A stretch of DNA of 64,000 nucleotides from Tubulanus polymorphus (Eukaryota; Animalia; Nemertea): positions 4,240,231 through 4,304,230 of the forward strand of contig NC_134033.1 of NCBI RefSeq assembly GCF_964204645.1, in the 5' to 3' direction. Positions 21,816-64,000 of the stretch are shown in pieces (positions within the stretch are counted from its first letter, which is position 1; every line of letters starts with the position of its first letter). The notes beneath the pieces are model-generated. The model made no database searches. It worked only from the letters and a program-made list of their open reading frames with translations, and had not been told where the DNA came from. The position numbers were made by a program, and so were the translations under genes.

Positions 21816-21875
21816 AGCTCTTGATTTTGTATGTAAGATTCTGTTTTATGTGAACTAATAAATGTCATTTCTACT

Positions 21876-24550
21876 CTATAGTCGACGCGATTCATTTGTT
21901 TTTGGGTATGGAGAAGTGTATTCTGTGTTTATATTCATATTGCAGGAATTAGGACTAAAAAGGGAACTAATAAGAAATTCCCTTTTTATTTGGGAAGGCC
22001 TTAAAGGCGATTGTTCTAAAGTGTATTGAATTCGAAATATTGGCATGTACATTGATAACTCAAAATACAAGTCATACTCGAGTAGACTGTACAATACAAG
22101 TCCTGCTACTGCGTTATTTTCACATATTGTTGTTATATGACGGGTTTCTGTAAACGTGGAAAATAAATTGTTCGGTTCATCAAATAACTTGATAATTTGT
22201 GTTAGTAAGATCGATCCCCTTGTGCGGATACCAATAGATTCGGAACATGATGTTTGTCCGATAAATTTAAACAGGAATCGGAAGTAATGATTTATATTTT
22301 TGTTAGAAGGAAAAGAGAAAATAAAGAATATAGTTGAGGAGGTTGATAATCCAGGGAAGTTTGGTGACTGCACGAGTCCACAATCTACAGCGTTCCTTGA
22401 AATTCCACCCATAAACCCTGGAAGCACTTGAATTATCTTTAATTTCTGACATTTACGTCGTAATACAATCATTAGTGGTGAACTCCAGAATTCATATTTA
22501 GTGCGTAATAATTTCAAATGGTTTAATACGAGACTGGTGTTTAACACTTGACTATTGAGACTTATCGCTGAACAGGGATTCATAGCTGTACGATGACATC
22601 TGTCAATTTGATATTCGTGTTCTGATAATACATCTATGTTTTCTATCGGTAGGCGTCGATTTTCAGGTGTTATCACGAGACAGTATGACGTCATCTTGAT
22701 CTGACGTTCTCCTTCCTGTAGAACATAACCGTCACAATCAGTAGGAGCAAACTTGAGGAAACCAGTTACTAGTATATCATCCATGTTGTAAGCGTATGCT
22801 ACTACAGTAACCGGTCCACCTGATGTAATCAGGCTGACGACAGATCGACCGTAGAATGAACCAGGACAATACGGACCATAGCGTCTAGCTGTAAAATTTC
22901 CACCATCAAATATATAAAAACCAGCTCTCTCACAGTTCTCTGATAACACTGTTAGTTTTAAGTCTTTCTCATAGATGTCGATTTTCGAGCTGAATGCAAA
23001 TCTACTGATACGATATTGTAACTTCCGTTTCGGATAACGGGGGAACAGACTGTAATGTTGCACTAAATGATTATTTCCAACCTACAATAGATGCAAACAT
23101 AGAGTAAATCATCGGTATTCAATTAATGTTCATTCCTTATTTTCGTTTGCCATTTAACCGAAAAATATTGCGACTCTGTCGTTAAAGGGTCAATGACTTA
23201 CATTCGATCAGGTTTGATTTCAAAAAATTAGGATTCATGTGAATTTTACACATTCATCGTTGTTAAAGACTGTTAAATCAATACAATAAATATAAAATAT
23301 ATTTTCATGCTGTTTTAACTCACTTTTTTATCTTCCACTTTGACGTCTGTTTCCTTCAATGATTCTATTTTGTATTCGATCGATGTTGAATTCCTCAACG
23401 ATTTTCCGAAAAGATTCTCTGATAACAGTAAACACAATATCACGAGAAATCCGTCAGATTGTACGCCTAACGATTCCAGGAAGTTTTCGCGGAGTAAAAT
23501 ATCAGTTCCGACGACCGTTAAACCTTCCAGTTTATAAACACCGATGACGTCACCGGAAGTGACGAGATCACGTGACCAGTTGAAGACGACGTACTGCAGT
23601 ATTTCAGCTGTGATAGACCAGCAGTATAAGCGTTTAGACTGAGTTATTACGTGCGGCATATCACCAGGAATGAGCACTCCGGATTTATTTTTCCAGATCG
23701 GAATCGATGGATTCGAAATATTCCAATCTGATATCCTATACAATTTTACAAATAGATTAGTTTTGAGAGATAATCCGGCTTGTTTCATTGAAAAAGTGAC
23801 GATAGCTCTGTTAGTTTTCGTGTAAATAGAGATGGGCGGATGTCCGGTTTGTTCCCGTATATTCATTATAGGTTCACTTGTGTTCCATCCGTCATAAATT
23901 TGAACGGTCAAATATAAACCTTGTTTTTCTAATCTTAAGTCTATTTTCTCAAAAGTCAAATTCATTCCGAAACCCTCTGGTAACCCGGACCACTCCAACT
24001 GGAAAAGGTGACAAAATACATTCATGAAAATGGCATATTTGTAACCATTTTCAAAAGTTTGTAATTGTTTTATCCTATTTGAGTAACAATCGTGAACAGT
24101 TTTCAGATGTTTTTCCTCCAAACGATAAAATACATAAACTCGACTTCCTTTCACAACGTCATTTACATCACTCTTAAACATCAACGATAATGAATTACTG
24201 CGGTAAATATCTAATTGTTTTCCAGCACCACACAGTAAGTTATCAGAATCGCTGATGTGAAGATAGTTATCTCTACAGAATATAGACGGCTCGATGTCGT
24301 AGTAAAGTTGGACGCGAAAGGTGCCCGGTAAAGAGCTGTTGAAGAACCAACGACATTCAAAATCGCGCGTAAACGACGGATAATTCGGTGAAACGATGTA
24401 ACCGGACGTAGAATCGAGTGAAAACCACGTATTGTTACACCGTGAACTGACAGTTACAGACGGTTGATCGGTAGAGATCCGATCAGTCGTCTGAACCGAC
24501 GACAGTTTCGTTAGTAGAATGAGTAATAACGTTAAGAGACTGCGCGTCAT
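21876..24550 (-). pseudogene. GRL101-like LGR copy A, truncated within exon 2
   Basis: Exon 1 (24550-23324) is intact. Exon 2 starts at 23081 and matches the paralogs up to ...LEQSPL (~22002), then reads ~40 unrelated codons to a stop at 21876. No exon 3 is found to the left in the window. Confidence 0.88.
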
Positions 24551-24647
24551 GTTGACATTCTCCTCGATCAGTTCAACTCTAAACACGTCGAGTAGATTTT
24601 AATCCAATTAATGTTGGGCGTTTTTCAGTGGACCGAGATAGAGCTGG

Positions 24648-25952
24648 ATGAGTCAGACTACACGGCGCTCACTAAAAATTAAATTCGATAATCTACGAAA
24701 CCGAGTAATGATTAACGAGATTAAAATGAAATGTAAAAATGTTATTCGATATTTTGTGCCGAGTCAGTTTTATATACGTACATACAATTTCAAAACTCTA
24801 AATTCAAAACGTCCTATTTCGAATACTACCTTTAGCTCGCTGTAAGGTGCTGCTCTCCTCATCGTTAGCGGATTTTCTAGATACTAACTTGAGTCGACTG
24901 GCCATCGATTTGTTGAGGAGGCCGTGTTGATTGCCAGACTCGATTCATATCTTTTTATCTTAAAATAGGGATTGATTCTGCTATTCGTTTGATTTTCATG
25001 ATTTGGGGTCCCTTATAAACACACCACACCTGCCGGTAGCGAAACAGGGGTTTTGATTTTGAAATCGGAATTCGAAGTATAGATAAAGTCGTGTGATCGG
25101 CGGTCAAAATTACAGAATTTTTTATTTTCATGTTTCCAGCCCTATTCGTCTGCCCGTTTTGAGAGGCTTTAATGGTGATCGAGCATTAAATAAATTATCT
25201 TCTCTCGCGCAGCAAAACGATCCCGAAAAGGTTAGTAATGTTTTATTGTTGACGTTTCGCCTCGTATCGTAATAGACATCTTCAGGAATATTGAACGTCG
25301 GAATTAAATCATTAGCCGTGATAGTGCTCAACAATGTTGAGGTGATATGAATAATTATTTTGAAGGAAAAATTTTTACAGAATTAATGAATCAGCAAGTA
25401 AATTAAAATTGTAATAATATTAAATGAAGGACGGCTTTGAAACGATAGTTAGAAGCTTATAAAAGAAAGCAGCGATAGAAAAGATGACTTTGATGAAACC
25501 AGGATTGATCATTACAGATAAGGGAAGATTAACAGAGCAATTCTAAGTTCTAAAATAAATTCAGTATAATCTCACCAGTGTCTAATTATTGATAATTGAA
25601 AAAAAATTCAAAATGGGAAAAGAATAAATTTTCTCAGAGGTAGGCGAAGTCGGGTGGACGATGGTTTACAATCACGGGTTAGGAGATATTCAGAAGCCTC
25701 GAGAAATCTGGAGGGACCGCCACAAAATGGCGCTTAGAAACTGGAAACTTCTTTATTGGCTCCGCGGTCGGCGCAGTCTTTAATGTGGGTCGATGAAATG
25801 TATTCATATTTTCAAATATCGTTTATGTGTAATATCTTATCTTAATGTTCGTAAAGTGTTGTGATTATCCTTAACGCTGTGCTATAGAGGAAATAAATGA
25901 TAATTATTGATCATTATTATCTTCACAGTATAGAGATTATCAGTATTATCAT
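24648..25952. repeat. A-B intergenic spacer, near-identical to 55530-55990 plus 59301-60130 (segmental duplication)
   Basis: Direct sequence match over both blocks, including the duplicated 68-aa ORF (25128-25334 and 59306-59512). Confidence 0.9.
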
Positions 25953-28900
25953 CATTTGATTGGTTGTCGTTTTCTGCGTTTATTTCGAGCTCGTATTGAT
26001 TTCATATCGATAGTTAGAATAGTGTAAAGAAGCGGGTTCAGAGTTGAGTTTATCGGCAAGAAAAGAACGGCCAGCCAAGCGGCAACCTGGTTCGGTATCT
26101 CGACCGAAAATACGGCGCAAAACTGGACGATTATTAACGGTAACCAGCAAAATAAATTACACAAATTGATGACTAAACTGCGTCGAGCTAGAACGAGTTC
26201 TGTAGGATCAGCTCTACCCGAACCGGACCTGCTTCCGGATACATACTTGTACATCTGCGCGTACGACATCATTATCAGAGTGAGAATGATCGCGTTTAAT
26301 ACAGCGAATATAGCGAACGAATATTGCCAACCATTGACATCTATAGATATTAAATTCATAGGTAAACAGATACCCGTACTACCGTAAAAATTATCACCGA
26401 AATAAGACGACCGAGACAGCGGCAGAAAGGCGATTAAACTCAGAAATATCCAGCATAAACAAGACAGAATCGAAATAATATTTGAGGATAAAACCGGGTT
26501 ACCGGAAAATGGGTCGATGATATTCGAACATCTGAAACGCGTGAGGAGAAGGAGAAATGTTAAAGAGCCTTCACATGATATCGTCACCACAATTCCGGCA
26601 ACACTGCATAATGAACTACGAGTCCAAGTTTCAGTATTCAGGAAATAAACACCCTTATAAACGTGATCAGTTGCAGCGATCAGAAACAGATAAACAGACA
26701 TCAGCAAATCACAAAGCGCGATATTGATGATGAGGATATCCGACGATTTATTTTGCGTTTCTGACGAAACTCGAATCGACCTAAAACGAAATAAGATAAC
26801 GGTAATATTGGAAAGGAATGTAAAACAAGCGATGATCCAGATAACAGCTGTGAGGACAGTGTTCTCAATGAGGTCTGAACACGATGAGAATTGATCAGGA
26901 TCCGGGAGACACCGGTCAATATTCGGCACCATACAACAGAATTTATACGCGTCCGAAGCGAGAAAATATAAAGACGTCAGATTATCGAAGATATTATTTT
27001 CCGTAGAAATTACCGGAGAATTGTTGGTGAAATCTAGAACTCCCAGTGAACTCAACCCAGTAAACGCGTATCTGGATATTGATTCGATTACGTTACTGCT
27101 GATGTTCAAATATTTCAGCGCTGGTAAACCTCGGAATACGTTACGAGTAAGAATCGATATAGAGAGACCTTGGAGATCCATAACCGGAAGAGACGTCAAA
27201 CCATTGAAGCTTCCATCGTTCAAATATCTCAGCGGATTTCCGGCGAGTAAAAGTTGTTTCAAACTGTTTAAACCAGTGAATGTATTAGCATCTAGTGATA
27301 CTAGGCGATTACACGACAAATCTAATGTATTTAGATTGCGTAGATTAGAAAACGCGTTGGAGACAATGTCAGATAAATCATTACGGGAAATATTGAGTAA
27401 GAAAAGGTACAGAAAAGAGGAAAATGTCGATTCATTGAATCTAACTCGGTTATTCGGTAAAATCAAAACTCGAGTCGACGCCGCAAAAATTCGAGAAATA
27501 TCCGATAAAAAAGTATTTTCACAATCGATGAAACGACCTTGACATTTACAATAGTTAGGGCACGTGACGTCGCAGTAAGCCTCGTCATCCGAGTTATGTT
27601 TACAATTAACGACGCCATCGCAAACTTCCGACTGAGGAATACATCGATGTTCGTCAGCGCATTTAAACATTCCCGGACACGAAAACGTTTCGCAATTGAA
27701 TTCATCTTCTGAATTGGGACAATCTGATCGACCATCGCACACGTGTCTAATCGGTATACAGTAAGACGATGGACATTTCACTGTACCAGCTGCACATTCA
27801 AACTCATTACAATTCAGTAAATGTTCGAGTCTTCTACAAACAGGAAAACCTGTCGACATTCTTTCTAAAATACATCTATCTCTTCTCGCGTAACAATGAG
27901 GAGAATCGAATGAACATCTTTGTTTATCCGATTCGGTACAGAGTGAAGTGAAATTGGTCGTGCAGTAGTTCTCTGTAGTGCAGTGAATTCGTGGTTTGAT
28001 TGTTATATTGGTCGTTACTATTTCATCTTCTTCGAGGTCCCCGCCACAATCTACAACACCATCCCGATACAACAGAGAACTGATACATTCGCCATTTACG
28101 CACAAAAACCCGTTACATTCGTCCGAAGAGCAGCCGATCTCATCGGATTTATCTCGACAATCGACCAGTCCATCACATCGTTTATATTTACCCACACATT
28201 GTCCGTCGTTACACTTAAATTGATCAGAGGAACATGAAATATGATAGCACGAGTTCTCATCCGAGCCATCGACGCAATCTCTCATAAAGTCACAGAAACC
28301 GCTAATCGATATAACCTGTCCATCGTTACAGCGGAACTGACTGTGTAAATTGATATCCGTACAATTGAGTTCATCTTCACCGTGTTGACAGTCGTGTCTG
28401 GTATCGCATACGCGATGGTCGCTGATACATCTTTGATCGTTACATTCAAACTGCCACGATTTACAACCGCTTATAGAAGCTAACTCTTCACCAGTTACAT
28501 CATAGGAACATAGCACGGAATGCGCTTCATCTGTGACATTATCGAAGGCAGTCACTGACCATTTCACTGTTTGAAAATACGTTATCCAATCTCTAATTAC
28601 AACTGGTTTTATTGCCACAATTCTTCCGCTTGTATGATTAGTCAGTATAGCGCCATATTGATGCTGATAGTGGAAAACATTTATCAAATGCTGAATTTCA
28701 ATACTAGATGTTATTATACCTATGTCTCCACCGATTGTAAGACACATTTCTCTAGCTGTTTGGATTGTTAAACGTTCAGTGTGGAGCGTTTGCCAGGCTG
28801 TAAGTATTTGATAGCAATGCGCTTCTATACGAATCCACCCTCTTAGACACGTGGAGTTAAATCGTTCAAAGTTGTTTCGAGTTATTTCAGTTTTATCGTT

Positions 28901-31900
28901 TTGTGAAGAAGTATTTAAATCGTTTCTTTCTGTTTCACAAATGAATGTCGTGTGCGTCTCCTCGATTTGACACGGAAATCGAACCCAGTTCACCGATCCT
29001 CGTGGATTATTCAGTATCATCGCCGTACACGGCATATTGACGTCATTTATCGGTTGTTTTCTTAGTGGAGATATCAATCCTCGAATAACTTCTGGTATCG
29101 TTTCATTAACAGCAGCAGGTTTAAACCATTCTGTGTAACTGAACGGTTTCCCATCAGACCACGAATAATAACCACTGGACTCCTTTTAAAACAAACAAAC
29201 AAACAAATATTTGTTATACAATATTGCAGAAAACTCTTTTTGGATTATTTTCTCTGTGTTCTAATCATTTTTGGAATAACTTCATATCTTGACACATGAC
29301 AAGAATATAGATCATAATCATCAAAGCTCAATTAGATGATTGATATTTGATATGTATTTTACCTGCCATTTCAGTCCAATCATCACAATAAGCGCCGCCT
29401 GTGAATATGCCTCATGAAGCAGTTTTGTAGCGAACAGCTTTTTCACGGCCATCATTTCATGTTGAGAGTTGATACTGAGAAGATGTCCACCATATTTCTG
29501 TTGACAGTAAATTTCAGCGTTCTCCCAATTCAGACGTTCGTGTTTAATGTATCTAATACACGAAACGCCTGAATCTATAAAATCTGATCGGCAGCCATTG
29601 ATTCGATGTTTCAGTAAAGGCGATTGTTCTAAAGTGTATTGAATTCGAAATATTGGCATGTACATTGATAACTCAAAATACAAGTCATACCCGAGTAGAC
29701 TGTACAATACAAGTCCTGCTAATGCGTTATTTTCACATATTTTTGTTATATGACGGGTTTCAGTAAAGGAAAATGAATTATTTGGATCATCAAATATTTT
29801 AATAATTTGTCTTAGTAATATTGCCTCCCTTGTGCGGGTACCAACAGATTCGGAGCATGATGTTTGTCCGATAAATTTAAACAGGAATCTGATGTAATGA
29901 TTTATTTTTTTGTCAGTAGGAAAAGAGAAAATAAAGAATATTGTTGAGGAGGTTGATAATCCAGGGAAGTTCGGTGACTGCACGAGTCCACAATCTACAG
30001 CGTCCCAAGAAATTCCACCAAATGTTCCTGGAATATGTAGACTTTGTTTTAATTTCTGACATTTACGTCGTAATACAATCATTAGTGGTGAACTCCAGAA
30101 TTTATATTTAGTGAGTAATAATTTCACATGGTTAAATACGAGACTGGTATTTAACAATTGACTATTGAGACTTATCGCTGAACAGGGATTCATAGCTCCA
30201 CGATAACAACTGTCAATTTGATATTCGTGTTCTGATAATACATCAATATTTTCAATCGGTAGGCGTCGATTTTCAGGTGTAATCATGAGACAGTATGACG
30301 TCATAGTGATTTGTCGTTCTCCTTCCTGTAGAACATACCCGTCACAATCAGTTGGAACTAATTTTAGTGTACCAGTTACTAGTATATCATACCAGTTGTA
30401 AGCGTACGCTACTACAGTAACCGGTCCACCTGATGTAATCAGGCTGACGACAGATCGACCGTAGTATGAACCAGGACAATACGGACCATAGCGTCTAGCT
30501 GTGAAATTACTACCATCAAATATATAAAAACCAGCTCGATCACAATTCTCTGATAAAACTGTTAGTTTTAATCCGCGTGATAAATACTCATAGATGTCGA
30601 TTTTCGAGCTGAGTGCAAATCTACTGATACGATATTGTAACTTCTGTTTCGAATAACGGGGGAACAGACTGTAATGTTGCACTAAACGATTATTTCCAAC
30701 CTACAATAAATACAAACATGGAGTAAATCATCGGTTTTCAATTAATATTCATGCCTTTTATTTTCCTTTTCCATTTAACCGAAAAATATTGCGACTCTGC
30801 CGTTAAAGGGTCACTGACTTATGTTAGATCAGGTTTGATTTCAAAAAATTACAATTTTTGTGAATTTTACACATTATTTCATCGTGAATAAAACAATTTG
30901 AAAGAGGTGAATTGACCATATCATTTCCATGCCGTTTTAACTCACTTTTTTATCTTCCACTTTGACGTCTGTTTCCTTCAATGATTCTATTTTGTAATCG
31001 ATCGACGTTGAATTCCTCAACGATTTTCCGGAAAGATTCTCTGATAACAGTAAACACAATATCACGAGAAATCCGTCAGATTTTACACCTAACGATTCCA
31101 GGTAGATTTCGCCGAGTAAAATATCAGTTCCGACAACCGTTAAACCTTCCAGTTTATAAACTCCGATGACGTCACCGGAAGTGACGAGATCACGTGACCA
31201 GTTGAAGACGACGTACTGCAGTATTTCAGCTGTGATAGACCAGCAGTATAAGCGTTTAGACTGAGTTATTACGTGCGGCCTATCACCAGGAATGAGCACT
31301 CCGGATTTGTTTTTACAGATCGGAATCGATGGATTCGAAATATTCCAATCTGATATTCTATACAGTTTTACAAATAGATTAGTTTCAAAATGTAATCCGG
31401 CCTGTTTCATTGAAAAAGTGACGATAGCTCTGTTAGTTTTAGTGTAAATAGAGATGGGCGGATGTCCCGTTTGTTCCTGTATATTCGTTATAGGTTCACT
31501 TGTGTTCCATCCGTCATAAATTTGAACGGTCAAATCTAAACCCGCCTGTTCTAATCTTAAGTTTATTACCTCAAAAGTCAGATTCATGCCGAAACCCTCT
31601 GGTAACCCGGACCACTCGAGCTGCAGGAAATGACATATTCTATTCATGCCGATAGCAAATTTGTAACCAGTTTTAAGAGTTTGCAATTGTTTCAGTCGGT
31701 AGAACAAACAGTGGTGAACAGTTTTCAGATGTTTTTCCTCCAAACGATAAAATACATAAACTCGACTTCCTTTCACAACATCATTTACATCACTCTTAAA
31801 CATCAACGATAATGAATTACTGCGGTAAATATCTAATTGTTTTCCATCACCGCACAGTAAGTTATCAGAATCGATGATGTGAAGATAGTTATCTCTACAG

Positions 31901-32172
31901 AATATAGACGGCTCGATGTCGTAGTAAACTTGGACGCGAAAGGTACCCGGTAAAGAGCTGTTGACGAACCAACGACATTCAACACCGCGCGTAAACGACG
32001 GATAGTTCGGTGAAACGATGTAACCGGACGTAGAATCGAGTGAAAACCACGTATTGTTACACCGTGAACTGACAGTTACAGACGGTTGGTCGGTAGAGAT
32101 CCGATCAGTCGTCTGAACCGACGACAGTTTCATTAGTAGAATGAGTAATAACGTTAAGAGACTGCGCGTCAT
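25952..32172 (-). CDS. GRL101-like class C LGR (CUB / C-type lectin / LDLa / LRR / 7TM GPCR), copy B, apparently intact, 3 exons, ~1931 aa
   Basis: Exons 32172-30946, 30700-29363 and 29182-25952, joined by phase-0 GT-AG introns (AAA|GTGAGT, TTGTAG|GTT, CAG|GTAAAA, AAAAG|GAG). Signal peptide MTRSLLTLLLILLMKLSSVQT; CUB motif SGYIVSPNYP; CTL motifs WENAEIYC, IGL, WSDG, FICE; LDLa DCxxxSDE repeats; LRRNT CPNYCKC; LRRs; hinge FCC...PDQFSSCSDL; 7TM with CWLP and NPLLY. Confidence 0.92.
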
Positions 32173-32272
32173 GTTGACATTCTCCTCTATTAGTTTAACT
32201 CTAACTACAGCGAGAAGATTTTAATCCAATTAATGTTGGGCGTTTCCGAGTTAGAGAGAGCGGTTGAGAGGA

Positions 32273-32279
32273 TGAGTCA
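32273..32279. promoter_or_regulatory. AP-1-type site TGAGTCA ~100 bp upstream of the GPCR ATG (also 24649-24655, 40576-40582, 55531-55537)
   Basis: Exact consensus within a conserved upstream block in copies A, B, C and E; TGAGTCC in copy D. Function not demonstrated. Confidence 0.3.
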
Positions 32280-32622
32280 GACTACACCGCGCTCACTAAA
32301 AATTAAATTCGATAATCTACGAAACCGAGTAATGATTAACGAGATTTAAAAAATATAATTCGATATTCAGTGCATAGGCAGTTCTATATTTATATATTTA
32401 TACATACAATTTTAAAACGTCCTCCGTCCAGTGGTAAACCGACAACGCTACTGCGGCAAGCGAGGATTCGGTGATAATCCGCTTGGCGTCGCTAGTGGTC
32501 TCTGATTTACCGCGCTGCGAATTCATTCTTCACAAGAGACCGCGCATGCGCAGTTGTGAAACACCTCACGACTATTAGAAGATCCCAATCTTGATCGTCA
32601 GTAGAATATGGTGGCTTTGTTT

Positions 32623-33360: not shown

Positions 33361-33665
33361 GGTAGAATTTTTTTTTAAATTGTAGTTTTTCTATCCGTAG
33401 ATAGTCCAGAGCGTAAGGGTCCAAACGGTCAGAGTTAGGTTGGGTTTAGGGTTTTATAGGGAAAAATTATAGGTACAAATGTTATAAATGTAAATGTAGT
33501 TAAAAGTTGCATAGCCGGCAGTCGAGCTTATGTGTTCAAGTCCCATTTTGAAATGTCAAAACTGATAAAGATAATTATCTAAGAACTACTTTAGTATATT
33601 TAAGTGATGATATCTTAACTGCTGAAAAGTGAACTATCTGCAATAAACCGTTAAGCGGTTTCTAA

Positions 33666-40200: not shown

Positions 40201-40473
40201 GAATATAGACGGCTCGATGTCGTAGTAAACTTGGACGTGAAAGATACCCGGTAAAGAGCTGTTGACGAACCAACGACATTCAACACCGCGCGTAAACGAC
40301 GGATAATTCGGTGAAACGATGTAACCGGACGTAGAATCGAGTGAAAACCACGTATTGTTACACCGTGAACTGACAGTTACAGACGGTTGATCGGTAGAGA
40401 TCCGATCAGTCGTCTGAACCGACGACAGTTTCATTAGTAGAATGAGTAATAACGTTAAGAGACTGCGCGTCAT
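34242..40473 (-). CDS. GRL101-like class C LGR, copy C, apparently intact, 3 exons, ~1931 aa
   Basis: Exons 40473-39247, 39000-37663 and 37472-34242, the same lengths as copy B (1227/1338/3231 nt). Canonical splice sites, open frame throughout, same domain order. Confidence 0.92.
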
Positions 40474-47900: not shown

Positions 47901-48133
47901 AAGGTACCCGGTAAAGAGCTGTTGACGAACCAACGACACTCAACACCGCGCGTAAACGACGGATAATTCGGTGAAACGATGTAACCGGACGTAGAATCGA
48001 GTGAAAACCACGTATTGTTACACCGTGAACTGACAGTTACAGACGGTTGATCGGTAGAGATCCGATCAGTCGTCTGAACCGACGACAGTTTCATTAGTAG
48101 AATGAGTAATAACGTTAAGAGACTGCGCGTCAT
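41932..48133 (-). pseudogene. GRL101-like LGR copy D, pseudogene
   Basis: Exons 48133-46907, 46654-45337 and 45162-41932. Exon 2 has a net ~11-nt deletion/frameshift at ~46076 and in-frame TAG codons at ~45532 and ~45473. Exon 3 has three nonsense codons (44212-44214, 42922-42924, 42430-42432). Confidence 0.9.
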
Positions 48134-55200: not shown

Positions 55201-55426
55201 CCGGTAAATAGCTGTTGACGAACCAACGACATTCAACACCGCGCGTAAACGACGGATAATTCGGTGAAACGATGTAACCGGACGTAGAATCGAGTGAAAA
55301 CCACGTATTGTTACACCGTGAACTGACAGTTACAGACGGTTGATCGGTAGAGATCCGATCAGTCGTCTGCACCGACGACAGTTTCATTAGTAGAATGAGT
55401 AATAACGTTAAGAGACTGCGCGTCAT
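49288..55426 (-). pseudogene. GRL101-like LGR copy E, frameshifted in exon 3 (pseudogene or truncated secreted form)
   Basis: Exons 55426-54200 and 53994-52651 are open. Exon 3 (52488-49288) has a 26-bp deletion at ~52214 (stop at 52198) and a 4-bp deletion at ~49623 in TM5. Confidence 0.85.
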
Positions 55427-56735
55427 GTTGACATTCTCCTCGATCAGTTTAACTCTAACTACAGCGAATAGATTTTAATCCAATTAATGTTGGGCGTTTC
55501 CGAGTGAGTGAGAGAGAGCGGTAGAGAGGATGAGTCAGACTACACGGCGCTCACTAAAAATAAATTCGATAATCTACGAAACCGAATTAATGATTAACGA
55601 GATTCAAATGAAATGTAAAAATGTTATTCGATATTTTGTGCCGAGTCAGTTTTATATACGTACATACAATTTCAAAACTCTAAATCCAAAACGTCCTATT
55701 TCGAATACTACCTCTAGCTCGCTGTAAGGTGCTGCTCTCCTCATCGTTAGCGGATTTTCTAGATACTAACTTGAGTCGACTGGCCATCGATTTGTTGATT
55801 GCCAGTCTCGATTCATATCTTTTTATCTTAAAATAGGGATTGACTCTGCTATTCGTTTGATTTTTATGATTTGGTGTCCCATGTAAACACACCACACCTG
55901 CCGGTAGCGAAACAGGGGTTTTGATTTTGAAATCGGAAATCGAAGTATAGATAAAGTCGTGTGATCGGCGGCCAAAATTACAGAATTTTTTGTTTAAATC
56001 GATGTAATTAATTTTTAGAATGAAAATCCCGCTTAAAAGAGCATAGTGGCAGCAACTTGCGATACAGCTAGCGGTAGTATTTCGCCGTATCTAGAAATTC
56101 CACTGTATCCACAGTTTTAGTCACTGTTGCAGTTTGCGGCGTGGCTCGGTGGATCAAGCTGTTTCACTCAGGACATAATGCTTTCGTGTCAGGACATAAT
56201 CAGCGTCCGATTACTCACAGATCTAACAAATCCTTTCGTCATAGAATACTCGCGGATGCCGGAGTATCTGTACGGATGGATGAGCTGGACATTCAAAAAG
56301 GAACCACACAAAAGGTCATTTTGGAACAAAGCCTGATGCTATCAGCGCTGTGCGACAATTATACCTGTTCAAGAGTTTGAGTCCTGCTGAATGCAGTTCG
56401 GGCAACACTTTAGAGGCTGTTATCCAGTCATGAGGTTCGCACGATCCAGTAGTAGGGTTGCAAAATATTTCCTACGTATCTTTGTTTTCGACCAATTCTG
56501 AAGCCGATAAAATCCATATGGAACTCGTCGAAGAAGGTAAACTACCCAATGCTGTACTTAGAAGGATATTTCAAAACATGGATAATATATAGATACGACT
56601 CGCCATAGAATCATCGCACAACACAATATATTATGAGTTTATGTCGTGCTCCTGTCTTATGTCTGTTATCAACTTTTTTCCCCTTCTCACCCTGTGTCAC
56701 CCGATGAGAATACTGTACATTACGAAGTTAGGAAG

Positions 56736-57670
56736 CAGGGGTGGATCCAGGGGCATATTTTGATTGCCTTCCTAAAGAAATGAGGGCACCCACAAGGGGG
56801 AGCGCGGGGTAACCCCCAGGGGCGGATCCAGGGGGATGGGTAGACAGTATTGGAAGGAAATTTAAGGGCTCCTTTCTGATCTTAGTGCACACCCAGTATC
56901 CAGGTCAATGCGAGCGCCGAAGGCGCGAAGTCCTTAGAGGGGGGTCCCACCCCCAGAAAATGTTGAAAATATGGTACCATTTTTTACCTTTTAGAGGGCT
57001 TCTAGAGGCTAGCAGAGCAATCCAGAATAAACGAATTCGAGACAAGATTTCAACAGATGCGGATAAAAAATGAAGCTGGTGAACCCATGAAAGAATGGTT
57101 GTCGCCAACTTCGCCTAATGCCCCTATAATCTTTAAAAGTGCCCCTTAACAATTATACAGAATATGTCTAAGTGCCCCTTCATTGTTAACAATCGGCAAA
57201 AATTGCCTCGTCTTCACATTTATCCTTATGTCGTGTGCCATCTTCCAAACCAAAAGTGCCCCTAAAATTTTAAAAATTAGGCAAAAAAGTGCCCTTTTCT
57301 TCAACATTTTTTCCGCGTATAGTGCCCTCTTCTAAAGTACGAGTGCCCCTTTAGCCCTCCCTGAAAAGGCAAGGACAAAGTGCCCTCATCTAAAGCATGA
57401 GTGCCCCTTGCAAAAGGAAAGTGCCCTTTTTAATTTATCATGATTAAAGGCTTTACAAATATGATTATCTCTCCTCACTTTCTCGGCAGCGGTATATACC
57501 GATTAATTTTATAATTATGCCCGGATTACGGACACTGAAATAGCGGTTGCTGAAATAATGCCGTCAAAAATATTGCCGGTGAAATTTCGAAGGGCACTTA
57601 AAAATTCGAGACCTCGGGATTTTTTGACTGCCTTCCGGAAGGCATGGAAGGCACCCTGGATCCGCCCCTG
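56736..57670. mobile_element. Non-autonomous TIR element (CAGGGG.GGATCCAGGG termini, 5-bp TSD)
   Basis: Termini CAGGGGTGGATCCAGGG and CCCTGGATCCGCCCCTG. GGAAG direct repeat at 56731-56735 and 57671-57675. About nine internal AGTGCCC repeats at 57138-57428. Confidence 0.85.
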
Positions 57671-58027
57671 GGAAGGTAATTTCTATTCACTCGATTTCTT
57701 ATTAAAACCATCGGAACAGTGGAAATCGGATATGTCGTAGTAGTTGAGACGATAATTATGTTTATAACTAGTCGAAAGGACGTTGTTTGATTTTCATTTC
57801 ATTTATTGTTCATGAAGCTAATTTTGACCGTTATAAAGCGACCAGTTAATGCACAGTCGAATTGTTTCATCTCACTGGATTCCATTGGTTAACTTTGAAA
57901 GGCACAGATTGAGGACGGGTCAATTTTTACCAAATTACCCGTAACGTTCTTAGCGTTCAAAAACGACGATCGTAAAGTTTCTGAGTCTTTGAACTGTGAA
58001 CAAAAAATCAGAAAAACTCGAGTTCAA

Positions 58028-58466
58028 TTACGTCACGTACGTGAATAATTCATTGAGGGTCCACGTATAAACAACCCCCCTTTTGCTATGATTTCTAAGA
58101 ACTAAATCATTTATAATTTTTAACAACTCTTTCTCCACGATTTCGTGAACGTGGGTGCGCCCTCTGATTTGGTAAAAGTAAATTAAGCGCTCATGGCGTT
58201 CGATTCGATCGATTTCCAAAATTTTCTAAAAAGACTTCATAAAACGAGATGATTACGTGCCATTTGTCTATTGAACAACGTAAACGCCTTGACTTCATAA
58301 ACAGCCTGTAAATCAACCATCCACCAATGCATTCCGGGTTTGGCCGCGGTGTGGGTACAGCTACCAGCTCCGTACTTAGTGTTAATACTACCGTCGACAG
58401 CTTTTCGCGCATTTTCTCCTACGGAGCTTTGGTATACCGGTTTGTTCAAAGCGACGTTCCGCAAGG
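58028..58466 (-). pseudogene. F-type lectin (fucolectin/FTP domain) exon, frameshifted
   Basis: NVALNKPVYQSS..A.KAVDG..SCTHT..WWMVDLQAVYEV..LFNR is the F-type lectin signature. The frame breaks after FNR; the remainder, ending WTLNELFTY (resembling LTLCEVEVY), is in another frame. Confidence 0.8.
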
Positions 58467-60129
58467 CTTCGAATATATTATATACAATAAACGAGTACGA
58501 AAATATTAGGATCTAGGTTTTGGAAAATCGGAAAGCGGGGTCTGAGCGGATAAAAGCAGCCTCGGCGTGGGGTTCAATATCGGGGCGTTAGGTATTTTTG
58601 TAGTAATCCGCCAGAAAAGATACGATTTCAAATGATGAGCGTAAAATTGTTAAGTTTTAGCAATTTCCAACAGTCCTGGCAAAAAGGGCGAACCATGAGA
58701 TTAACCCCTAAATCTAGCCCTGCAAACCGACGATGATCATTGCATCGTCGAGCATGCGTGTATTTCATCGATAGAAAAACACTGAAAATGTGTTTGGTTT
58801 AAAGCGATTACAAGATTTTACGGAAGAATAATTTGAAGTAGAAAAATCGAGTTTTGAAAAACGTGTTTATTGATCATTTTGCGACCGTCGAATATCTTGC
58901 AGCAAAATATGAATAATGAATGCGTTGTGTTGAAAGTAATAATAATATTACGCTGAACTTACTGATAACGCGTGCGATCACGATAACGATCGCTAATACG
59001 ATGGATGAGAGCGACTTGTTCCTCTTTTCCGACTTACCCCACCTCACAACTTTAACAGAACTGAATGATGATTCACCAAAATTTCTGGCGTGTTGTAGTC
59101 GAATATTTCACAAAACCGATAGAAGAAGAACCGATATCGCTACTGGAAACTGTTTTATTATTTATACAGTATTTGGTTACACATTTTCTACCCATTTCGA
59201 CGAGAGTTTAACGTTCAACGCCGAAACCATGGCTGGTTCTGCAGTATCGGAATAATAGAAAATATTTCAGCGACTTGCTGGCGACATTTTGTTGATTTTC
59301 TATTTTCATGTTTCCAGCCCTATTCGTCTGCGCGTTTTGAGAGGCTTTAACGGTGATCGAGCATTAAATAAATTTTCTGCTCTCGCGCAGCAAAACGATC
59401 CCGAAAAGGTTAGTAACGTTTTATTGTTGACGTTTCGCCTCGTATCGTAATAGACATCTTCAGGAGTACTGAATGTCGGAATTAAATCATTAGCCGTGAT
59501 AGTGCTCAACAATGTTGAGGTGATATGAATAATTATTTTGAAGTAAAAATTTTTACAGAATCAATGAATCAGCAAGTAAATTAAAATTGTAATAATATTA
59601 AATGAAGGACGGCTTTGAAACGATAGTTAGAAGCTTATAAAAGAAAGCAGCGATAGAAAAGATGACTTTGATGAAACCAGGATTGATCATTACAGATAAG
59701 GGAAGACTAACAGAGCAATTCTAAGTTCTAAAATAAATTCAGTATAATCTCACCAGTGTCTAATTATTGATAATTGAAAAAAAATTCAAAATGGGAAAAG
59801 AATAAACTTTCTCAGAGGTAGGCGAAGTCGGGTGGACGTTGGTTTACAATCACGGATTAGGAGATATTCAGAAGCCTCGAGAAATCTGGAGGGACCGCCA
59901 CAAAATGGCGCTTAGAAACTGGAAACTTCTTTATTGGCTCCGCGGTCGGCGCAGTCTTTAATGTGGGTCGATGAAATGTATTCATATTTTCAAATATCGT
60001 TTATGTGTAATATCTTATCTTAATGTTTGTAAAGTGTTGTGATTATCCTTAACGCTGTGCTATAGAGGAAATAAATGATAATTATTGATCATTATTATCT
60101 TCACAGTATAGAGATTATTAGTATTATCA

Positions 60130-63100
60130 TCATTTGATTGGTTGTCGTTTTCTGCGTTTATTTCGAGCTCGTATTGATTTCATATCGATAGTTAGAATAG
60201 TGTAAAGAAGCGGGTTCAGAGTTGAGTTTATCGGCAAGAAAAGAACGGCAAGCCAAGCGGCAACCTGGTTCGGTATCTCGACCGAAAATACGGCGCAAAA
60301 CTGAACGATTATTAACGGTAACCAGCAAAATAAATTACACAAATTGATGACTAAACTGCGTCGAGCTAGAACGAGTTCTGTAGGATCAGCTCTACCCGAA
60401 CCGGACCTGCTTCTGGATACATACTTGTACATCTGCGCGTACGACATCATTATCAGAGTGAGAATGATCGCGTTTAATACAGCGAATATAGCGAACGAAT
60501 ATTGCCAACCATTGACATCTATAGATATTAAATTCATAGGTAAACAGATACCCGAACTACCGTAAAAATTATCACCGAAATAAGACGACCGAGACAGTGG
60601 TAGAAAGGCGATTAAACTCAGAAATATCCAGCATAAACAAGACAGAATCATAATGATATTTGAGGATAAAACCGGGTTACCGGAAAATGGGTCGATTATA
60701 TTCGAATATCTGAAACGCGTGAGGAGAAGGAGAAATGTTAAAGAACCTTCGCAAGATATCGTCACCACAATACCGGCAACACTGCATAATGAACTACGAG
60801 TCCAAGTTTCAGAATTCAGAAAATAAACACCTTTATAAACGTGATCAGTTGCAGCGATCAGAAACAGATAAACAGACATCAGCAAATCACAAAGCGCGAT
60901 ATTGATGATGAGGATATCCGACGATTTATTTTGCGTTTCTGACGAAACTCGAATCGACCTAAAACGAAATAAGATAACGGTAATATTGGAAAGGAATGTA
61001 AAACAAGCGATGATCCAGATAACAGCTGTCAGGACAGTGTTCTCAATGAGGTCTGAACACGATGAGAATTGATCAGGATCCGGGAGACACCGGTCAATAT
61101 TCGGCACCATACAACAGAATTTATACGCGTCCGAAGCGAGAAAATATAAAGACGTCAGATTATCGAAGATATTATTTTCCGATGAAATGATCCGCGAATT
61201 GTTGGTGAAATCTAGAACTCCCAGTGAACTCAACCCAGTAAACGCGTATCTGGATATTGATCTGATTGCGTTACTGCTGATATTCAAATATTTCAGCGCT
61301 GGTAAACCTCGGAATACGTTACGAGTAAGAATCGATATAGAGAGTTCACGGAGATCCATAACCGGAAGTGACGTCAAACCATTGAAGCTTCCATCATTCA
61401 AATATCTCAGCGGATTTCCGGCGAGTAAAAGTTGTTTCAAACTGTTTAATCCAGCGAATGTATCAACGTGTAGTGATACTAGGCGATTATACGACAGATC
61501 TAATGTATTTAGATTGCGTAGATTAGAAAACGCGTTGGAGACAATGTCAGATAAATCATTACGGGAAATATTGAGTAAGAAAAGGTACAGAAAAGAGGAA
61601 AATGTCGATTCATTGAATCTAACTCGGTTATTCGATAAAATCAAAACTCGAGTCGACGCGGCAAAAATTCGAGAAATATCCGATAAAAAAGTATTTTCAC
61701 AATCGATGAAACGACCTTGACATTTACAATAGTTAGGACACGTGACGTCGCAGTAAGCCTCGTCGTCCGAGTTATGTTTACAATTCACGACGCCATCGCA
61801 AACTTCCGACTGAGGAATACATCGATGTTCGTCAGCGCATTTAAACATTCCCGGACACGAAAACGTTTCGCAATTGAATTCATCTTCTGAATTGGGACAA
61901 TCTGATCGACCGTCGCACACGTGTCTAATCGGTATACAGTAAGACGATGGACATTTCACTGTACCAGCTGCACATTCAAACTCATTACAATTCAGTAAAT
62001 GTTCGAGTCTTCTACAAACAGGAAAACCTGTCGGCATTCTTTCTAAAATACATCTATCTCTTCTCGCGTAACAATGAGGAGAATCGAATGAACATCTTTG
62101 TTCATTCGATTCTGTACAGAGTGAAGTGAAATTCGTCGTGCAGTAGTTCTCTGTAGTGCAGTGAATTTGTGGTTTGATTGTTATATCGGTAGTTACTATT
62201 TCATCTTCTTCGAGGTCCCCGCCACAATCTACAACGCCATCCCGAAACAACAGAGAACTGATACATTCGCCATTTACGCACAAAAACCCGTTACATTCGT
62301 CCGAAGAGCAGTCGATCTCATCGGATTTATCTTGACAGTCAACCAGTCCATCGCATCGTTCATATTTATCCACACATTGTCCGTCGTTACACTTAAATTG
62401 ATCAGAGGAACATAAAATATGATAGCACGAGTTCTCATCCGAGCCATCGACGCAATCTCTCATAAAGTCACAGAAACCGCTAATCGATATAACCTGTCCA
62501 TCGTTACAGCGGAACTGACTGTGTAAATTGATATCCGTACAATCGAGTTCATCTTCACCGTGTTGACAGTCGTTTCTGGTATCACATACGCGATGGTCGC
62601 TGATACATCTTTGATCGTTACATTCAAACTGCCACGATTTACAACCTCTTACAGAAACCAACTCTTCACCAGTTACATCATAGGAACATAGCACGGAATG
62701 CGCTTCATCTTTGACATTATTGAAGGCAGTCACTGACCATTTCACTGTTTGAAAATATGTTATCCAATCTCTAATTACAACTGGTTTTATTGCCATAATT
62801 CTTCCGCTTGTATGATTAGTCAGTATAGCGCCATATTGATGCTGATAGTGAAAAAAATTTATCAAATGCTGAATTTCAATACTAGCTGATGTTATTATAC
62901 CTATGTTTCCACCGATCACATTCAAAGTCACATTTCTCTAGCTGTTTGGATTGTTAAACTTTCAGTGTGGAGCGTTTGCCAGGCTGTAAGTATCTGATAG
63001 CAATGCGCTTCTATATGAATCCATCCTCTTAGACACGTGGAGTTAAATCGTTCAAAGTTGTTCCGAGTTATTTCAGTTGTATCGTTTTGTGAAGATGTAT

Positions 63101-64000
63101 TTAAATCGTTTCTTTCTGTTTCACAAATGAATGTCGTGTGCGTCTCCTCGATTTGACACGGGAATCGAACCCAGTTCGCCGATCCTCGTGGATTATTCAG
63201 CATCATCGCCGTACACGGCATATTGACGTCATTTATCGGTTGTTTTCTTAGCGGAGATATCAATCCTCGAATAACTTCTGGTATCGTTTCATTAACGGCA
63301 GCAGGTTCAAACCATTCTGCGTAACTGAACGGTTTTCCATCAGACCACGAGTAATAACCTTTGGACTCCTTTAATTAAAAAACAAACAAACACTTGTTAT
63401 ACAATATTGCAGAAAACTCTTTTTGGATTTTTTTCTGGTCTTCTAATCATTTCTTGAATAGCTTCATATCTTGACACATGACAAGAACATAAATCATTAT
63501 ATCAAAGCTCAATTGGATGATTAATATTTGATATGCATTTTACCTGCCATTTCAATCCTATCATCACAATAAGCGCCGCCTGTGAATATGCCTCAAGAAG
63601 CAGTTTTGTAGCGAACAGCTTTTTCACGGCCATCATTTCACGTTGAGAATTGATACTGAGAAGATGTCCTCCATATTTCTGTTGACAGTAAATTTCAGCG
63701 TTCTCCCAATTCAGAAGTTCGTGTTTAATGTATCTAATACACGAAACGCCTGAATCTAGAAAATCTGATCGGCAGCCATTGATTCGGTGTTTCAGTAAAG
63801 GCGATTGTTCTAAAGTGTATTGAATTCGAAATATTGGCATGAACTGTGACAACTCAAAATATAAGTCATACCCGAGTAGACTGTACAACACAAGTCCTGC
63901 TACTGCGTTATTTTCACATATTGTTGTTGTATGACGGGTTTCTATAAACGTGGAAAATAAATTGTTCGGATCGTCAAATATTTTGAAAATTTGTCTTAGT
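60130..64000 (-). pseudogene. GRL101-like LGR copy F (5' part outside the window), disrupted in exon 3
   Basis: 3' part of exon 2 (64000-63544) and exon 3 (63368-60130). TGA at 62928-62930 plus a small complex indel at ~62915-62930 that shifts the frame; the downstream 933-aa frame is otherwise open. Confidence 0.82.

What the first reader, a model, noticed from the sequence alone, without database searches (positions are those of the whole stretch)
21876..64000. Tandem array of giant CUB-CTL-LDLa-LRR GPCRs: variable sensor end, constant signalling end
Seen: at least six head-to-tail paralogs (stop-to-stop spacing 8290, 7690, 7356 and 10842 bp) of a ~1931-aa receptor with a ~1,630-aa ectodomain. 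The last ~135 aa (TM5-TM7 and tail) are essentially identical between copies, whereas the N-terminal CUB region differs in discrete patches. Established: GRL101/class C LGRs combine LDLa, LRR and 7TM domains and are expanded in some invertebrates; CUB and CTL are recognition modules. Inference: this is a birth-and-death, diversifying receptor repertoire (innate immune, allorecognition or chemosensory) that couples many specificities to one G-protein output.
Basis: partly seen in the sequence, partly recalled or inferred. Interest (0 to 1): 0.85.

Follow-up and report, generated by a model that had tools for sequence, protein, structure and literature searches.

The report
Giant GRL101-like receptor gene array
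A ribbon-worm chromosome segment holds six head-to-tail copies (two intact, four broken) of a gene for a 1,931-residue cell-surface receptor from a family of roughly 400 copies, in which short outer loops vary while the signalling end stays constant; it is a larger and more elaborate case of receptor-family expansions already described in snails.

Summary
Spacings of 8290/7690/7356/10842 bp, a 1,931-aa three-exon model and the CUB / C-type-lectin-like / 6 LDLa / LRR / rhodopsin-7TM layout are all reproduced. The genes lie on the minus strand.

Amendments:
- Only B and C are intact. D, E and F carry frameshifts or stops.
- "A" is the 5' half of a gene split in exon 2 by a 29.6-kb transposon.
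- The first CUB is conserved. The variable patches are short loops at aa 155-262, 411-455 and 570-760.

The genome is most likely Tubulanus polymorphus. The family has about 370-420 loci on at least 10 contigs. The 7TM is closest to relaxin receptor RXFP1, so this is GRL101 / type C LGR.

Evolution is duplication, decay and pervasive recombination between paralogs. One B/C tract of 1.15 kb is near-identical.

- The constant tail has omega 0.09 at ordinary dS, which indicates purifying selection.
- Ectodomain omega is 0.3-0.6.
- Site models nominally favour omega >1 (LRT 74), but my simulated nulls with recombination reach similar values. Only aa 396-475 clearly exceeds its null.

Diversifying selection is therefore suggestive, not shown. 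Expression and function (chemosensory or immune) remain untested.

The scan had already found this family in other windows of the same genome. Smaller GRL101 expansions are published for snails.

The parts
25952..32172 (-). Gene B, intact, 1,931 aa. Exon 1 is 30946-32172, intron 1 is 30701-30945, exon 2 is 29363-30700, intron 2 is 29183-29362, and exon 3 is 25952-29182 including the stop.
   Evidence: It is the only model with consensus GT-AG sites and an open frame.
34242..40473 (-). Gene C, intact, 1,931 aa. Exon 1 is 39247-40473, exon 2 is 37663-39000, and exon 3 is 34242-37472.
   Evidence: Projection of the B model keeps all frames open and all splice sites GT/AG.
41932..48133 (-). Pseudogene D. 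Exon 1 (46907-48133) is open. Exon 2 (45337-46654) has an 11-bp deletion. Exon 3 (41932-45162) has three in-frame stops.
   Evidence: The ORF list is fragmented here, and one search reports 2 TGA and 1 TAA.
49288..55426 (-). Pseudogene E. Exon 1 (54200-55426) and exon 2 (52651-53994) are open. Exon 3 (49288-52488) has a 26-bp and a 4-bp deletion.
   Evidence: The repeat spacing shifts from 7356 to 7352, and the ORF is truncated at 49611.
60130..64000 (-). Pseudogene F, which runs off the window. Exon 3 (60130-63368) has a 5-bp insertion at 62925. Exon 2 starts at 63544. Beyond the window only aa 1-246 of exon 1 match.
22002..24550 (-). Copy A, the 5' half of a split gene. Exon 1 is 23324-24550 (open) and exon 2 codons 1 to about 362 are at 22002-23081. 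The rest of exon 2 and exon 3 lie 29.6 kb away, before the window start.
   Evidence: B 29615-31000 matches window 22002-23378, and B 29101-29619 matches window coordinates -8111 to -7603.
1..22001 (.). The larger part of a 29,604-bp transposon that interrupts exon 2 of copy A. It has a 5-bp target duplication (TAAAG) and terminal inverted repeats of 338 bp. Its right inverted repeat is at 21664-22001.
   Evidence: Junctions and inverted repeats at 95.6% identity. Weak HTH_7 and DUF7869 ORFs at 16996-17472 and 18949-19422. The terminal repeat is found at about 20 places, in pairs 27-29 kb apart.
29227..30376 (-). Recombination or gene-conversion tract shared by B and C. Its partner in C is at about 37527-38676. 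It covers codons of about 518-855 and most of intron 2.
   Evidence: 76 of 78 informative sites group B with C inside the tract, against 109 of 282 outside. Max-chi2 is 84.5, and 0 of 200 permutations reach it. Nucleotide distance is 1.2-1.4% here, against 11.7% in aa 131-290.
31387..31710 (-). Hypervariable loops of the second CUB-like module in gene B, aa 155-262.
   Evidence: Alignment of 14 intact copies. The family-wide consensus has no majority residue at these positions. The sites are recurrently variable in two subgroups.
29993..30697 (-). The exon 2 variable region of gene B. The hottest loops are aa 411-455 (30563-30697) and aa 628-645 (29993-30046).
26018..26845 (-). The seven-helix signalling domain of gene B, aa 1635-1910. 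The last 135 aa (TM5-TM7 and tail) are at 25955-26359.
   Evidence: 7tm_1 hit, hydrophobic segments with CWLP and NPLLY, RXFP1 as best solved match at 7e-50, and omega of 0.15 and 0.085.
26873..28465 (-). Six LDLa modules (about 27548-28465) and the leucine-rich-repeat block (about 26873-27424) of gene B.
   Evidence: Pfam results.
55609..60129 (.). Long spacer between E and F, which explains the 10,842-bp spacing. It contains an interspersed repeat of about 800 bp at 56817-57613.
   Evidence: The whole spacer is 95% identical to the spacer between two paralogs at C9:3.187-3.191 Mb, in inverted orientation. The 800-bp core has 2,405 first-look candidates genome-wide at 95-98% identity.

Best explanation
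The region is part of a lineage-specific family of about 400 genes for type C leucine-rich-repeat GPCRs (GRL101 / relaxin-receptor type), most likely in the nemertean Tubulanus polymorphus.

Each gene encodes, in order:
- a signal peptide
- CUB and CUB-like modules
- about 235 residues of cysteine-containing sequence with no recognisable relatives
- a divergent C-type-lectin-like domain split by intron 2
- six LDLa modules
- an LRR block
- a rhodopsin-type 7TM

Shown here: the family grows by tandem and block duplication. It loses members to frameshifts, stops and a transposon hit. Its members exchange sequence by recombination or gene conversion, so each gene is a mosaic. The 7TM, especially TM5-TM7 and the tail, is held constant by purifying selection. 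Amino-acid change is concentrated in short loops of the outer modules, at the same positions in different subfamilies.

Inferred: the outer modules capture varied extracellular ligands. By analogy with RXFP1, the LRR/LDLa part relays binding to one conserved G-protein-coupling core. The family would then be a germline-encoded sensor repertoire. Chemosensory use is the more likely reading, by analogy with apple-snail GRL101 genes expressed in tentacles. Immune recognition is the alternative, by analogy with the Biomphalaria cluster linked to schistosome resistance.
For: - Array and gene model.
- Domains.
- Genome identity: contig C9 is 16,481,795 bp, the same length as the contig of a T. polymorphus protein.
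- Family size: first-look candidates number 380 for exon 1, 369 for exon 2 and 424 for the last 135 aa. All 102, 95 and 150 scored matches are strong.
- Type C LGR: RXFP1 (7TMW) at 7e-50, ahead of LHCGR, FSHR, TSHR and LGR4. Biomphalaria 'GRL101' at 4e-114.
- Gene death.
- Mosaicism.
- Selection gradient: omega is 0.085 in the last 135 aa at dS 0.09, 0.15 in the 7TM, 0.36-0.39 in LDLa and LRR, and 0.5-0.6 in the variable regions.
- Recurrent hot positions: sites with 3 or more states in one subgroup have dN 0.20-0.27 in the other, against 0.04-0.05 elsewhere. Their dN over flanking dS is 1.3-2.0.
- Site models: LRT is 74 in aa 131-290 and in aa 396-475, and non-significant in the 7TM, aa 291-395 and aa 761-855. 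Aa 396-475 exceeds all 25 null simulations.
- Published precedents: PMC6573481 reports 29-132 GRL101 genes in tandem with tentacle expression. PMC12297450 reports 12 clustered CTL-LDLa-LRR GPCRs.
- Architecture elsewhere: an unidentified eukaryote contig has an 835-aa CUB ORF followed by a 1,068-aa LDLa-LRR-7TM ORF, colinear with this gene.
Against: - No ligand, tissue or expression data exist for these genes. All four public runs were kept as contigs, and none is on record as RNA. The only hint of spliced transcripts is zero depth over both introns in two of the runs.
- Mean omega is below 1 everywhere. Variable patches also have raised dS (0.2-0.28), which fits old variants or imported tracts as well as selection.
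- Null simulations without positive selection reach LRT 79 for aa 131-290, so that signal is not significant once calibrated. One of 32 nulls reaches the full LRT, and 4 of 32 reach the gap-trimmed value.
- The acidic residue of the E/DRY motif is missing, with FRC aligned to RXFP1's EKY. G-protein coupling is therefore assumed, not shown.
- Four of the six units in this window are dead, so this particular array is decaying.
- Structure models were too poor to place the variable loops (pLDDT 36 and 49).
Confidence: 0.72

Rival explanations
1. Concerted evolution plus relaxed constraint only. The loops vary because they are unconstrained surface segments. Old or imported sequence tracts make them look hypervariable. 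No selection for diversity acts, and much of the family may be drifting towards pseudogenes.
For: - Omega at cross-validated hot codons is 1.0-1.6 against their own dS, with intervals that include 1.
- dS is raised in the same patches.
- Null simulations with recombination give LRTs up to 79.
- 42% of the close gene models are broken, and about a fifth of 150 exon-3 frames are truncated.
Against: - Exons 1 and 2 are open in nearly all of the roughly 200 scored copies.
- The framework residues and cysteines between the loops are invariant across 54-95% identical paralogs.
- dN at hot sites is 1.3-2.0 times the dS of adjacent codons.
- Aa 396-475 exceeds every null replicate, even after removal of gap-adjacent columns (34.3 against a null maximum of 26.2).
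Confidence: 0.3
2. The receptors serve innate immunity or allorecognition rather than chemosensation.
For: - CUB and C-type-lectin modules are common in recognition proteins.
- A cluster of CTL-LDLa-LRR GPCRs lies in a schistosome-resistance region of Biomphalaria sudanica (PMC12297450).
Against: - Nothing in the sequence distinguishes immune from chemosensory use.
- In that paper the validated variants lie in a neighbouring Zn-RING-IAP gene, not in the receptors.
- The largest published expansion of this receptor type, in apple snails, is expressed in tentacles and labial palps (PMC6573481).
Confidence: 0.25
3. They are ordinary endocrine receptors for an insulin/IGF-like or relaxin-like hormone, as has been proposed for single-copy GRL101.
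For: The 7TM and LRR are closest to relaxin receptor RXFP1. GRL101 has been proposed as an IGF receptor in animals where it is single-copy (bioRxiv 10.1101/2021.04.15.440029).
Against: About 400 copies, roughly 1,000 extra N-terminal residues and hypervariable loops do not fit a receptor for one hormone.
Confidence: 0.03
4. The tandem copies are an assembly artefact or uncollapsed haplotypes.
For: The copies are 93-97% identical, which is a range where assemblers can err.
Against: - The copies sit head to tail on one contig with different spacings and different spacers.
- Each copy has its own lesions, and divergence between copies is segment-specific.
- Hundreds of further copies lie on other contigs.
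- Contigs from a public run that also covers the introns match copy B at 99% or more in 310 of 490 pieces.
Confidence: 0.02

Closest known systems
GRL101 of Lymnaea stagnalis and type C LGRs (relaxin receptors RXFP1/2)
   Same: LDLa modules, then leucine-rich repeats, then a rhodopsin-type 7TM. RXFP1 is the best solved match for the 7TM (7e-50). A Biomphalaria protein named GRL101 matches exon 3 at 4e-114. CWxP and NPxxY are present.
   Different: [quoted passage not shown]
- Six LDLa modules, against twelve in Lymnaea GRL101 (as described) and one in mouse 'GRL101' as described in PMC6267866.
- Only two introns.
- About 400 copies, against the single copies reported in ambulacrarians.
- FRC in place of the E/DRY triplet.
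- Orthology to Lymnaea GRL101 was not tested by a tree.
Biomphalaria sudanica SudRes2 cluster of CTL-LDLa-LRR GPCRs (PMC12297450)
   Same: A C-type-lectin-like domain in front of LDLa, LRR and 7TM. Tandem cluster, with truncated and missing members between haplotypes.
   Different: Twelve genes in 440 kb, against hundreds here. No CUB modules are described. One LDLa is described, against six here. The phylum is different.
Ampullariid (apple snail) GRL101 expansion (PMC6573481)
   Same: Lineage-specific burst of tandemly duplicated GRL101-type GPCRs, read as environmental sensors.
   Different: 29-132 genes per genome, against about 370-420 candidates here. Expression in tentacles is shown there and unknown here. 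The giant CUB/lectin front end, the recombination mosaic and the loop hypervariability are described here only.
Vertebrate V2R and olfactory receptor families (analogy from general knowledge, not homology)
   Same: Large tandem families with many pseudogenes. A variable ligand-binding part is attached to a conserved 7TM.
   Different: Unrelated ectodomains. V2Rs are class C GPCRs. No evidence here for one-receptor-per-cell expression.
Unannotated homologue on ENA contig ERZ24900295:ctg5357l (L064)
   Same: An 835-aa ORF with CUB that ends inside the lectin-like domain at the same point as exon 2. It is followed by a 1,068-aa LDLa-LRR-7TM ORF that is 36% identical to exon 3.
   Different: Exons 1 and 2 are fused. 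Identity in the front end is only 21-26%. The organism is unknown, and no array is visible within 10 kb.

Membership tests
Type C LGR / GRL101-like GPCR | Rhodopsin-family 7TM most similar to relaxin-family receptors | tested here: met
   7tm_1 at 1e-16. RXFP1 at 7e-50, against LHCGR at 3e-27 and LGR4 at 1e-13.
Type C LGR / GRL101-like GPCR | Leucine-rich-repeat ectodomain directly before the 7TM | tested here: met
   LRR_8 at 1.5e-36 with 6 stretches, exon-3 residues 587-770.
Type C LGR / GRL101-like GPCR | One or more LDLa modules N-terminal to the LRRs | tested here: met
   Ldl_recept_a at 3e-37. Six stretches in all: one at exon-3 residues 240-274 and five more downstream.
Type C LGR / GRL101-like GPCR | Orthology with Lymnaea GRL101 in a phylogeny of LGRs | not tested
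Only pairwise scores are available.
Class A GPCR able to signal | Conserved micro-switches: E/DRY, CWxP, NPxxY | tested here: inconclusive
   CWLP (1867) and NPLLY (1904) are present. Arg3.50 is kept, but the triplet reads FRC where the RXFP1 chain has EKY.
CUB domain | Match to the CUB profile above the curated threshold | tested here: met
   First module: 40.3 bits against a 21.4 cut-off. Second module (aa 150-272): Pfam E of only 0.14, and fold matches to CUB domains at Z 6.6-7.7, which is within the noise range. Third module (exon-2 residues 235-365): only the 'CG..SPNYPG' start motif.
C-type lectin-like domain | Match to the Lectin_C profile over the whole domain | tested here: inconclusive
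   Pfam gives 20.8-21.9 bits, below the 22.6 cut-off, and covers only profile positions 2-36. It is not detected in paralogs where exons 2 and 3 are fused. However, 36 phmmer hits (best 6e-13) and PDB-profile hits (2.8e-5) all fall on true lectin domains. The WIGL-like and W.W.DG motifs continue across intron 2.
Birth-and-death multigene family | Tandem duplication with pseudogenes | tested here: met
Birth-and-death multigene family | Copies diverge independently, without homogenisation | tested here: not met
   The nearest relative changes along the gene. There is a B/C tract with 76 of 78 informative sites. The 5' and 3' ends are equally similar within and between clusters 11 Mb apart.
Repertoire under diversifying selection | Codon class with omega above 1 after allowing for recombination and dS variation | tested here: inconclusive
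   Nominal LRTs are 74, 74, 25, 23 and 21. The calibrated result is 0 of 25 nulls reaching the value for aa 396-475, and 1 of 32 for aa 131-290 (4 of 32 after gap trimming). dN at hot sites over flanking dS is 1.3-2.0.

The most novel reading that the evidence does not exclude
The roughly 400 genes form a germline recognition repertoire. A handful of short hypervariable loops in CUB-like modules are kept diverse by selection and are reshuffled among genes by gene conversion, with pseudogenes possibly serving as donors. The promoter-proximal end and the signalling end are homogenised across clusters on the same chromosome. This would be a GPCR-based counterpart of variable-loop receptor systems, not described for any LGR.
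Probability: 0.25. Interest if true: 0.7.

Novelty: new variant of a known kind. Interest (0 to 1): 0.5.

Why it matters
Nemertean sensory and immune receptors are almost unstudied. If these genes are expressed, the family would probably be one of the largest receptor repertoires of the animal. Its scale of about 400 genes of 6 kb each is more than 1% of a 268-Mb genome.

It would also extend the published snail GRL101 expansions to a second phylum, with a much larger front end.

The window gives a practical warning as well. Standard site-model tests (PAML M2a/M8) return p of about 1e-16 here, yet simulations without any positive selection, but with recombination and uneven divergence, reach similar scores. 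Claims of diversifying selection in such arrays need recombination-aware calibration.

Tried and rejected
- Structure prediction. AlphaFold2 on exon 2 (pLDDT 35.7) and exon 1 (49.1), using 21-paralog alignments, was too poor to use. Only aa 150-272 reached 70-85. The fold search gave Z below 8, with CUB domains among cupins and other jelly rolls, so it is only weakly indicative.
- Remote homology for exon 2. The ESM Atlas feature search for exon-2 residues 1-375 scored 0.78, below the noise level, although it listed CUB-like families. hhalign of the exon 1 profile against the exon 2 profile found only the CUB start motif. An exhaustive phmmer search of exon 2 against 1.84 billion representatives found nothing for its first 350 or so residues.
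- Withheld records. Records of the window's own genome appear to be withheld from the protein collections. Absence of T. polymorphus hits therefore says nothing about annotation.
- Expression. The four public runs are Logan contigs of unrecorded type. No exon-exon joint was listed. A 2015 run guessed to be RNA had no contig at 97% or more.
- Other scans. tRNA and Rfam scans of the window were empty.
- Rejected readings: uncollapsed haplotypes, a hormone receptor, and gene conversion alone as the cause of the constant tail. dS in the tail is 0.09, as high as elsewhere, while dN is 0.008.
- Searching the joined model. The joined 1,931-aa model was never sent to a search or fold tool. Searches were made exon by exon by reference, or with natural paralogs whose exons 2 and 3 form one open frame (L061, L062). 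Exons were concatenated only inside scripts, for codon counting.
Full report
**What is there**

The window is G000:C9:4240231-4304230 of a 268-Mb, 77-contig genome. Contig C9 is 16,481,795 bp long. The organism is therefore most likely this palaeonemertean.

All genes are on the minus strand.

For copy B, the only combination of consensus splice sites that keeps the frame open is the following:
- exon 1, 32172-30946
- a 245-nt GT-AG intron
- exon 2, 30700-29363
- a 180-nt GT-AG intron
- exon 3, 29182-25952

The product is 409 + 446 + 1076 = 1,931 aa, and both introns are in phase 0.

**Domains**

- Exon 1: a signal peptide, a clear CUB (40 bits) and a second CUB-like jelly roll at aa 150-272. 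The second module has a Pfam E of 0.14, AlphaFold pLDDT of 70-85, and fold matches to CUB domains at Z 6.6-7.7, which is within the noise band.
- Exon 2: about 235 residues with conserved cysteines and no detectable relative in 1.84 billion representative proteins. Next comes a module that opens with the CUB start motif CG..SPNFPG. Last comes the first half of a C-type-lectin-like domain.
- The lectin call is sub-threshold in Pfam (20.8-21.9 against 22.6 bits). It is supported by 36 phmmer hits and by PDB-profile hits, all on genuine lectin domains. The WIGL-like and W.W.DG motifs run across intron 2.
- Exon 3: six LDLa modules, an LRR block and a rhodopsin-type 7TM.
- The 7TM is closest to relaxin receptor RXFP1 (7e-50), ahead of LHCGR, FSHR, TSHR and LGR4. 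A Biomphalaria 'GRL101' matches at 4e-114. This places the gene among type C LGRs.
- CWLP and NPLLY are present. The E/DRY triplet reads FRC.

**State of the six units**

| Unit | State |
|---|---|
| B | intact |
| C | intact |
| D | 11-bp deletion in exon 2 and three in-frame stops in exon 3 |
| E | 26-bp and 4-bp deletions in exon 3 |
| F | 5-bp insertion in exon 3; beyond the window only a partial exon 1 match |
| A | 5' half of a split gene |

Copy A is not a short copy. Its homology to B stops at window 22002, at exon-2 nucleotide 1085. It resumes at exon-2 nucleotide 1082 at a position 29.6 kb away, before the window start.

The intervening 29,604 bp carry a 5-bp target duplication (TAAAG) and 338-bp terminal inverted repeats at 95.6% identity. 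The terminal repeat occurs at about 20 places in the genome, in pairs 27-29 kb apart. So a giant transposon split this gene.

In total, four of the six units are dead. Among 24 close gene models, 10 are broken.

**Family size**

Six-frame searches of the genome gave these first-look candidate counts:

| Query | First-look candidates | Scored, all strong |
|---|---|---|
| exon 1 | 380 | 102 |
| exon 2 | 369 | 95 |
| last 135 aa | 424 | 150 |

The matches lie on at least ten contigs. Across the family the last 135 aa stay 80-100% identical, while exons 1 and 2 fall to 56-65%.

**How the copies evolve**

Fourteen intact copies were aligned codon by codon. Exons were joined only inside scripts. 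Amino-acid divergence among the nine closest copies is as follows:
- 2-4% in the first CUB
- up to 24-26% in short patches at aa 155-262, 411-455 and 570-760
- 0-2% in the last 150 residues

Nei-Gojobori omega by region:

| Region | Omega |
|---|---|
| exon 1 | 0.48 |
| exon 2 | 0.54 |
| LDLa | 0.39 |
| LRR | 0.36 |
| 7TM | 0.15 |
| last 135 aa | 0.085 |

In the last 135 aa, dS is 0.09, as high as elsewhere. The constant tail is therefore due mainly to purifying selection.

dS itself ranges from 0.007 to 0.28 along the gene and is highest in the variable patches. Introns differ by 13-15%.

The cause is a mosaic history:
- Over aa 1-395, B is closest to a paralog 1 Mb away in inverted orientation.
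- Over aa 396-855, B is closest to its neighbour C.
- Over aa 856-1650, B is closest to a third gene.

A block at window 29227-30376 groups B with C at 76 of 78 informative sites. Max-chi2 is 84.5, and 0 of 200 permutations reach it. The first 130 codons and the 7TM are as similar between clusters 11 Mb apart as within a cluster.

The 4.4-kb E-F spacer is 95% identical to a spacer in the inverted cluster at 3.19 Mb. Whole blocks have therefore been copied.

**Is the variation selected?**

- Positions with three or more residues in one subgroup are also the fast positions in the other. Their dN is 0.20-0.27, against 0.04-0.05 elsewhere.
- At those positions omega is about 1.0-1.6 against their own dS, and intervals include 1.
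- Against the dS of adjacent codons, the ratio is 1.3-2.0.

I wrote a GY94 M1a/M2a test with a separate tree for each segment. Results:

| Segment (aa) | LRT |
|---|---|
| 131-290 | 74.5 |
| 396-475 | 74.0 |
| 661-760 | 25.4 |
| 571-660 | 22.5 |
| 1-130 | 20.8 |
| 291-395, 761-855, both 7TM halves | non-significant |

The chi-square p-values for these LRTs are not trustworthy here. I simulated data under M1a, with no positive selection, adding shuffled relationships between blocks and uneven block depth:
- For aa 131-290 the null had a median LRT of 24 and a maximum of 79. One of 32 replicates reached the observed value, and 4 of 32 reached the gap-trimmed value of 49.
- For aa 396-475 the null had a median of 7.5 and a maximum of 26. 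The observed 74, or 34 after removing gap-adjacent columns, exceeds all 25 replicates.

Diversifying selection is therefore plausible for some loops but is not established.

**Expression**

The only public runs that hold the sequence are stored as contigs of unrecorded type. Two of them have no depth over either intron while covering the exons. One covers the introns at low depth. This hints at spliced RNA from the family but does not prove it, and it cannot be assigned to B or C.

**Comparison with what is known**

- Apple snails have 29-132 tandem GRL101 genes expressed in tentacles (PMC6573481).
- Biomphalaria sudanica has a cluster of 12 CTL-LDLa-LRR GPCRs in a schistosome-resistance region (PMC12297450).
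- In ambulacrarians GRL101 is single-copy and has been proposed as an IGF receptor.
- An unidentified eukaryote contig carries the same two-part architecture. The CUB/lectin front end is therefore older than this expansion.

The nemertean family differs from these in scale, in the extra front end of about 1,000 residues, and in the documented mosaic evolution. Earlier follow-ups of this scan reached similar readings on other windows of the same genome. I rate the finding a new variant of a known kind.

Noticed in passing
window 1-22001 (whole element: C9:4232629-4262232; L063 plus the window): A 29.6-kb transposon with 338-bp terminal inverted repeats, further subterminal repeats out to about 850 bp, and a 5-bp TAAAG target duplication. 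It sits inside exon 2 of a receptor gene. Its terminal repeat occurs at about 20 places in the genome, in pairs 27-29 kb apart, so it belongs to a small family of giant elements. Its only long open frames give a weak HTH_7 hit and a DUF7869 hit.
   Followed up: partly
window 56817-57613: An interspersed repeat of about 800 bp in the E-F spacer. It has about 2,400 first-look candidates genome-wide at 95-98% identity, which suggests a young, very abundant element.
   Followed up: partly
window 55609-60129 and C9:3187053-3191479: The whole 4.4-kb spacer is 95% identical to the spacer between two paralogs 1.1 Mb away in inverted orientation. Parts of it recur in the A-B spacer (window 24818-25922). 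Multi-gene blocks have therefore been copied between clusters.
   Followed up: partly
L061:2384-7207 and L062:2200-6837 (C9:2.85 and 2.93 Mb): In some paralogs, exons 2 and 3 form a single open frame of 1,545-1,607 codons. Either the intron was lost or it is read through in frame.
   Followed up: no
window 26587-26595 (aa 1727-1729 of gene B): The E/DRY triplet at the end of TM3 reads FRC. The arginine is kept and the acidic residue is lost, which could alter activation or basal activity.
   Followed up: no
L064:6107-13207 (ENA ERZ24900295:ctg5357l): An unidentified eukaryote contig in a metagenome assembly has an 835-aa CUB ORF ending at the same point in the lectin-like domain. It is followed by a 1,068-aa LDLa-LRR-7TM ORF. 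This is the same architecture with exons 1 and 2 fused.
   Followed up: partly
window 32173-32322 (upstream of the gene B start codon): The 150 bp upstream of the start codon are well conserved between copies (6% difference), while sequence further upstream is not (about 20%). This may be a shared core promoter or 5' UTR.
   Followed up: no
window 29183-29362 and 30701-30945: Two public runs of unrecorded type cover the exons but have zero depth over both introns. A third run covers the introns at low depth. This hints that the first two are RNA and that the family is transcribed and spliced.
   Followed up: partly
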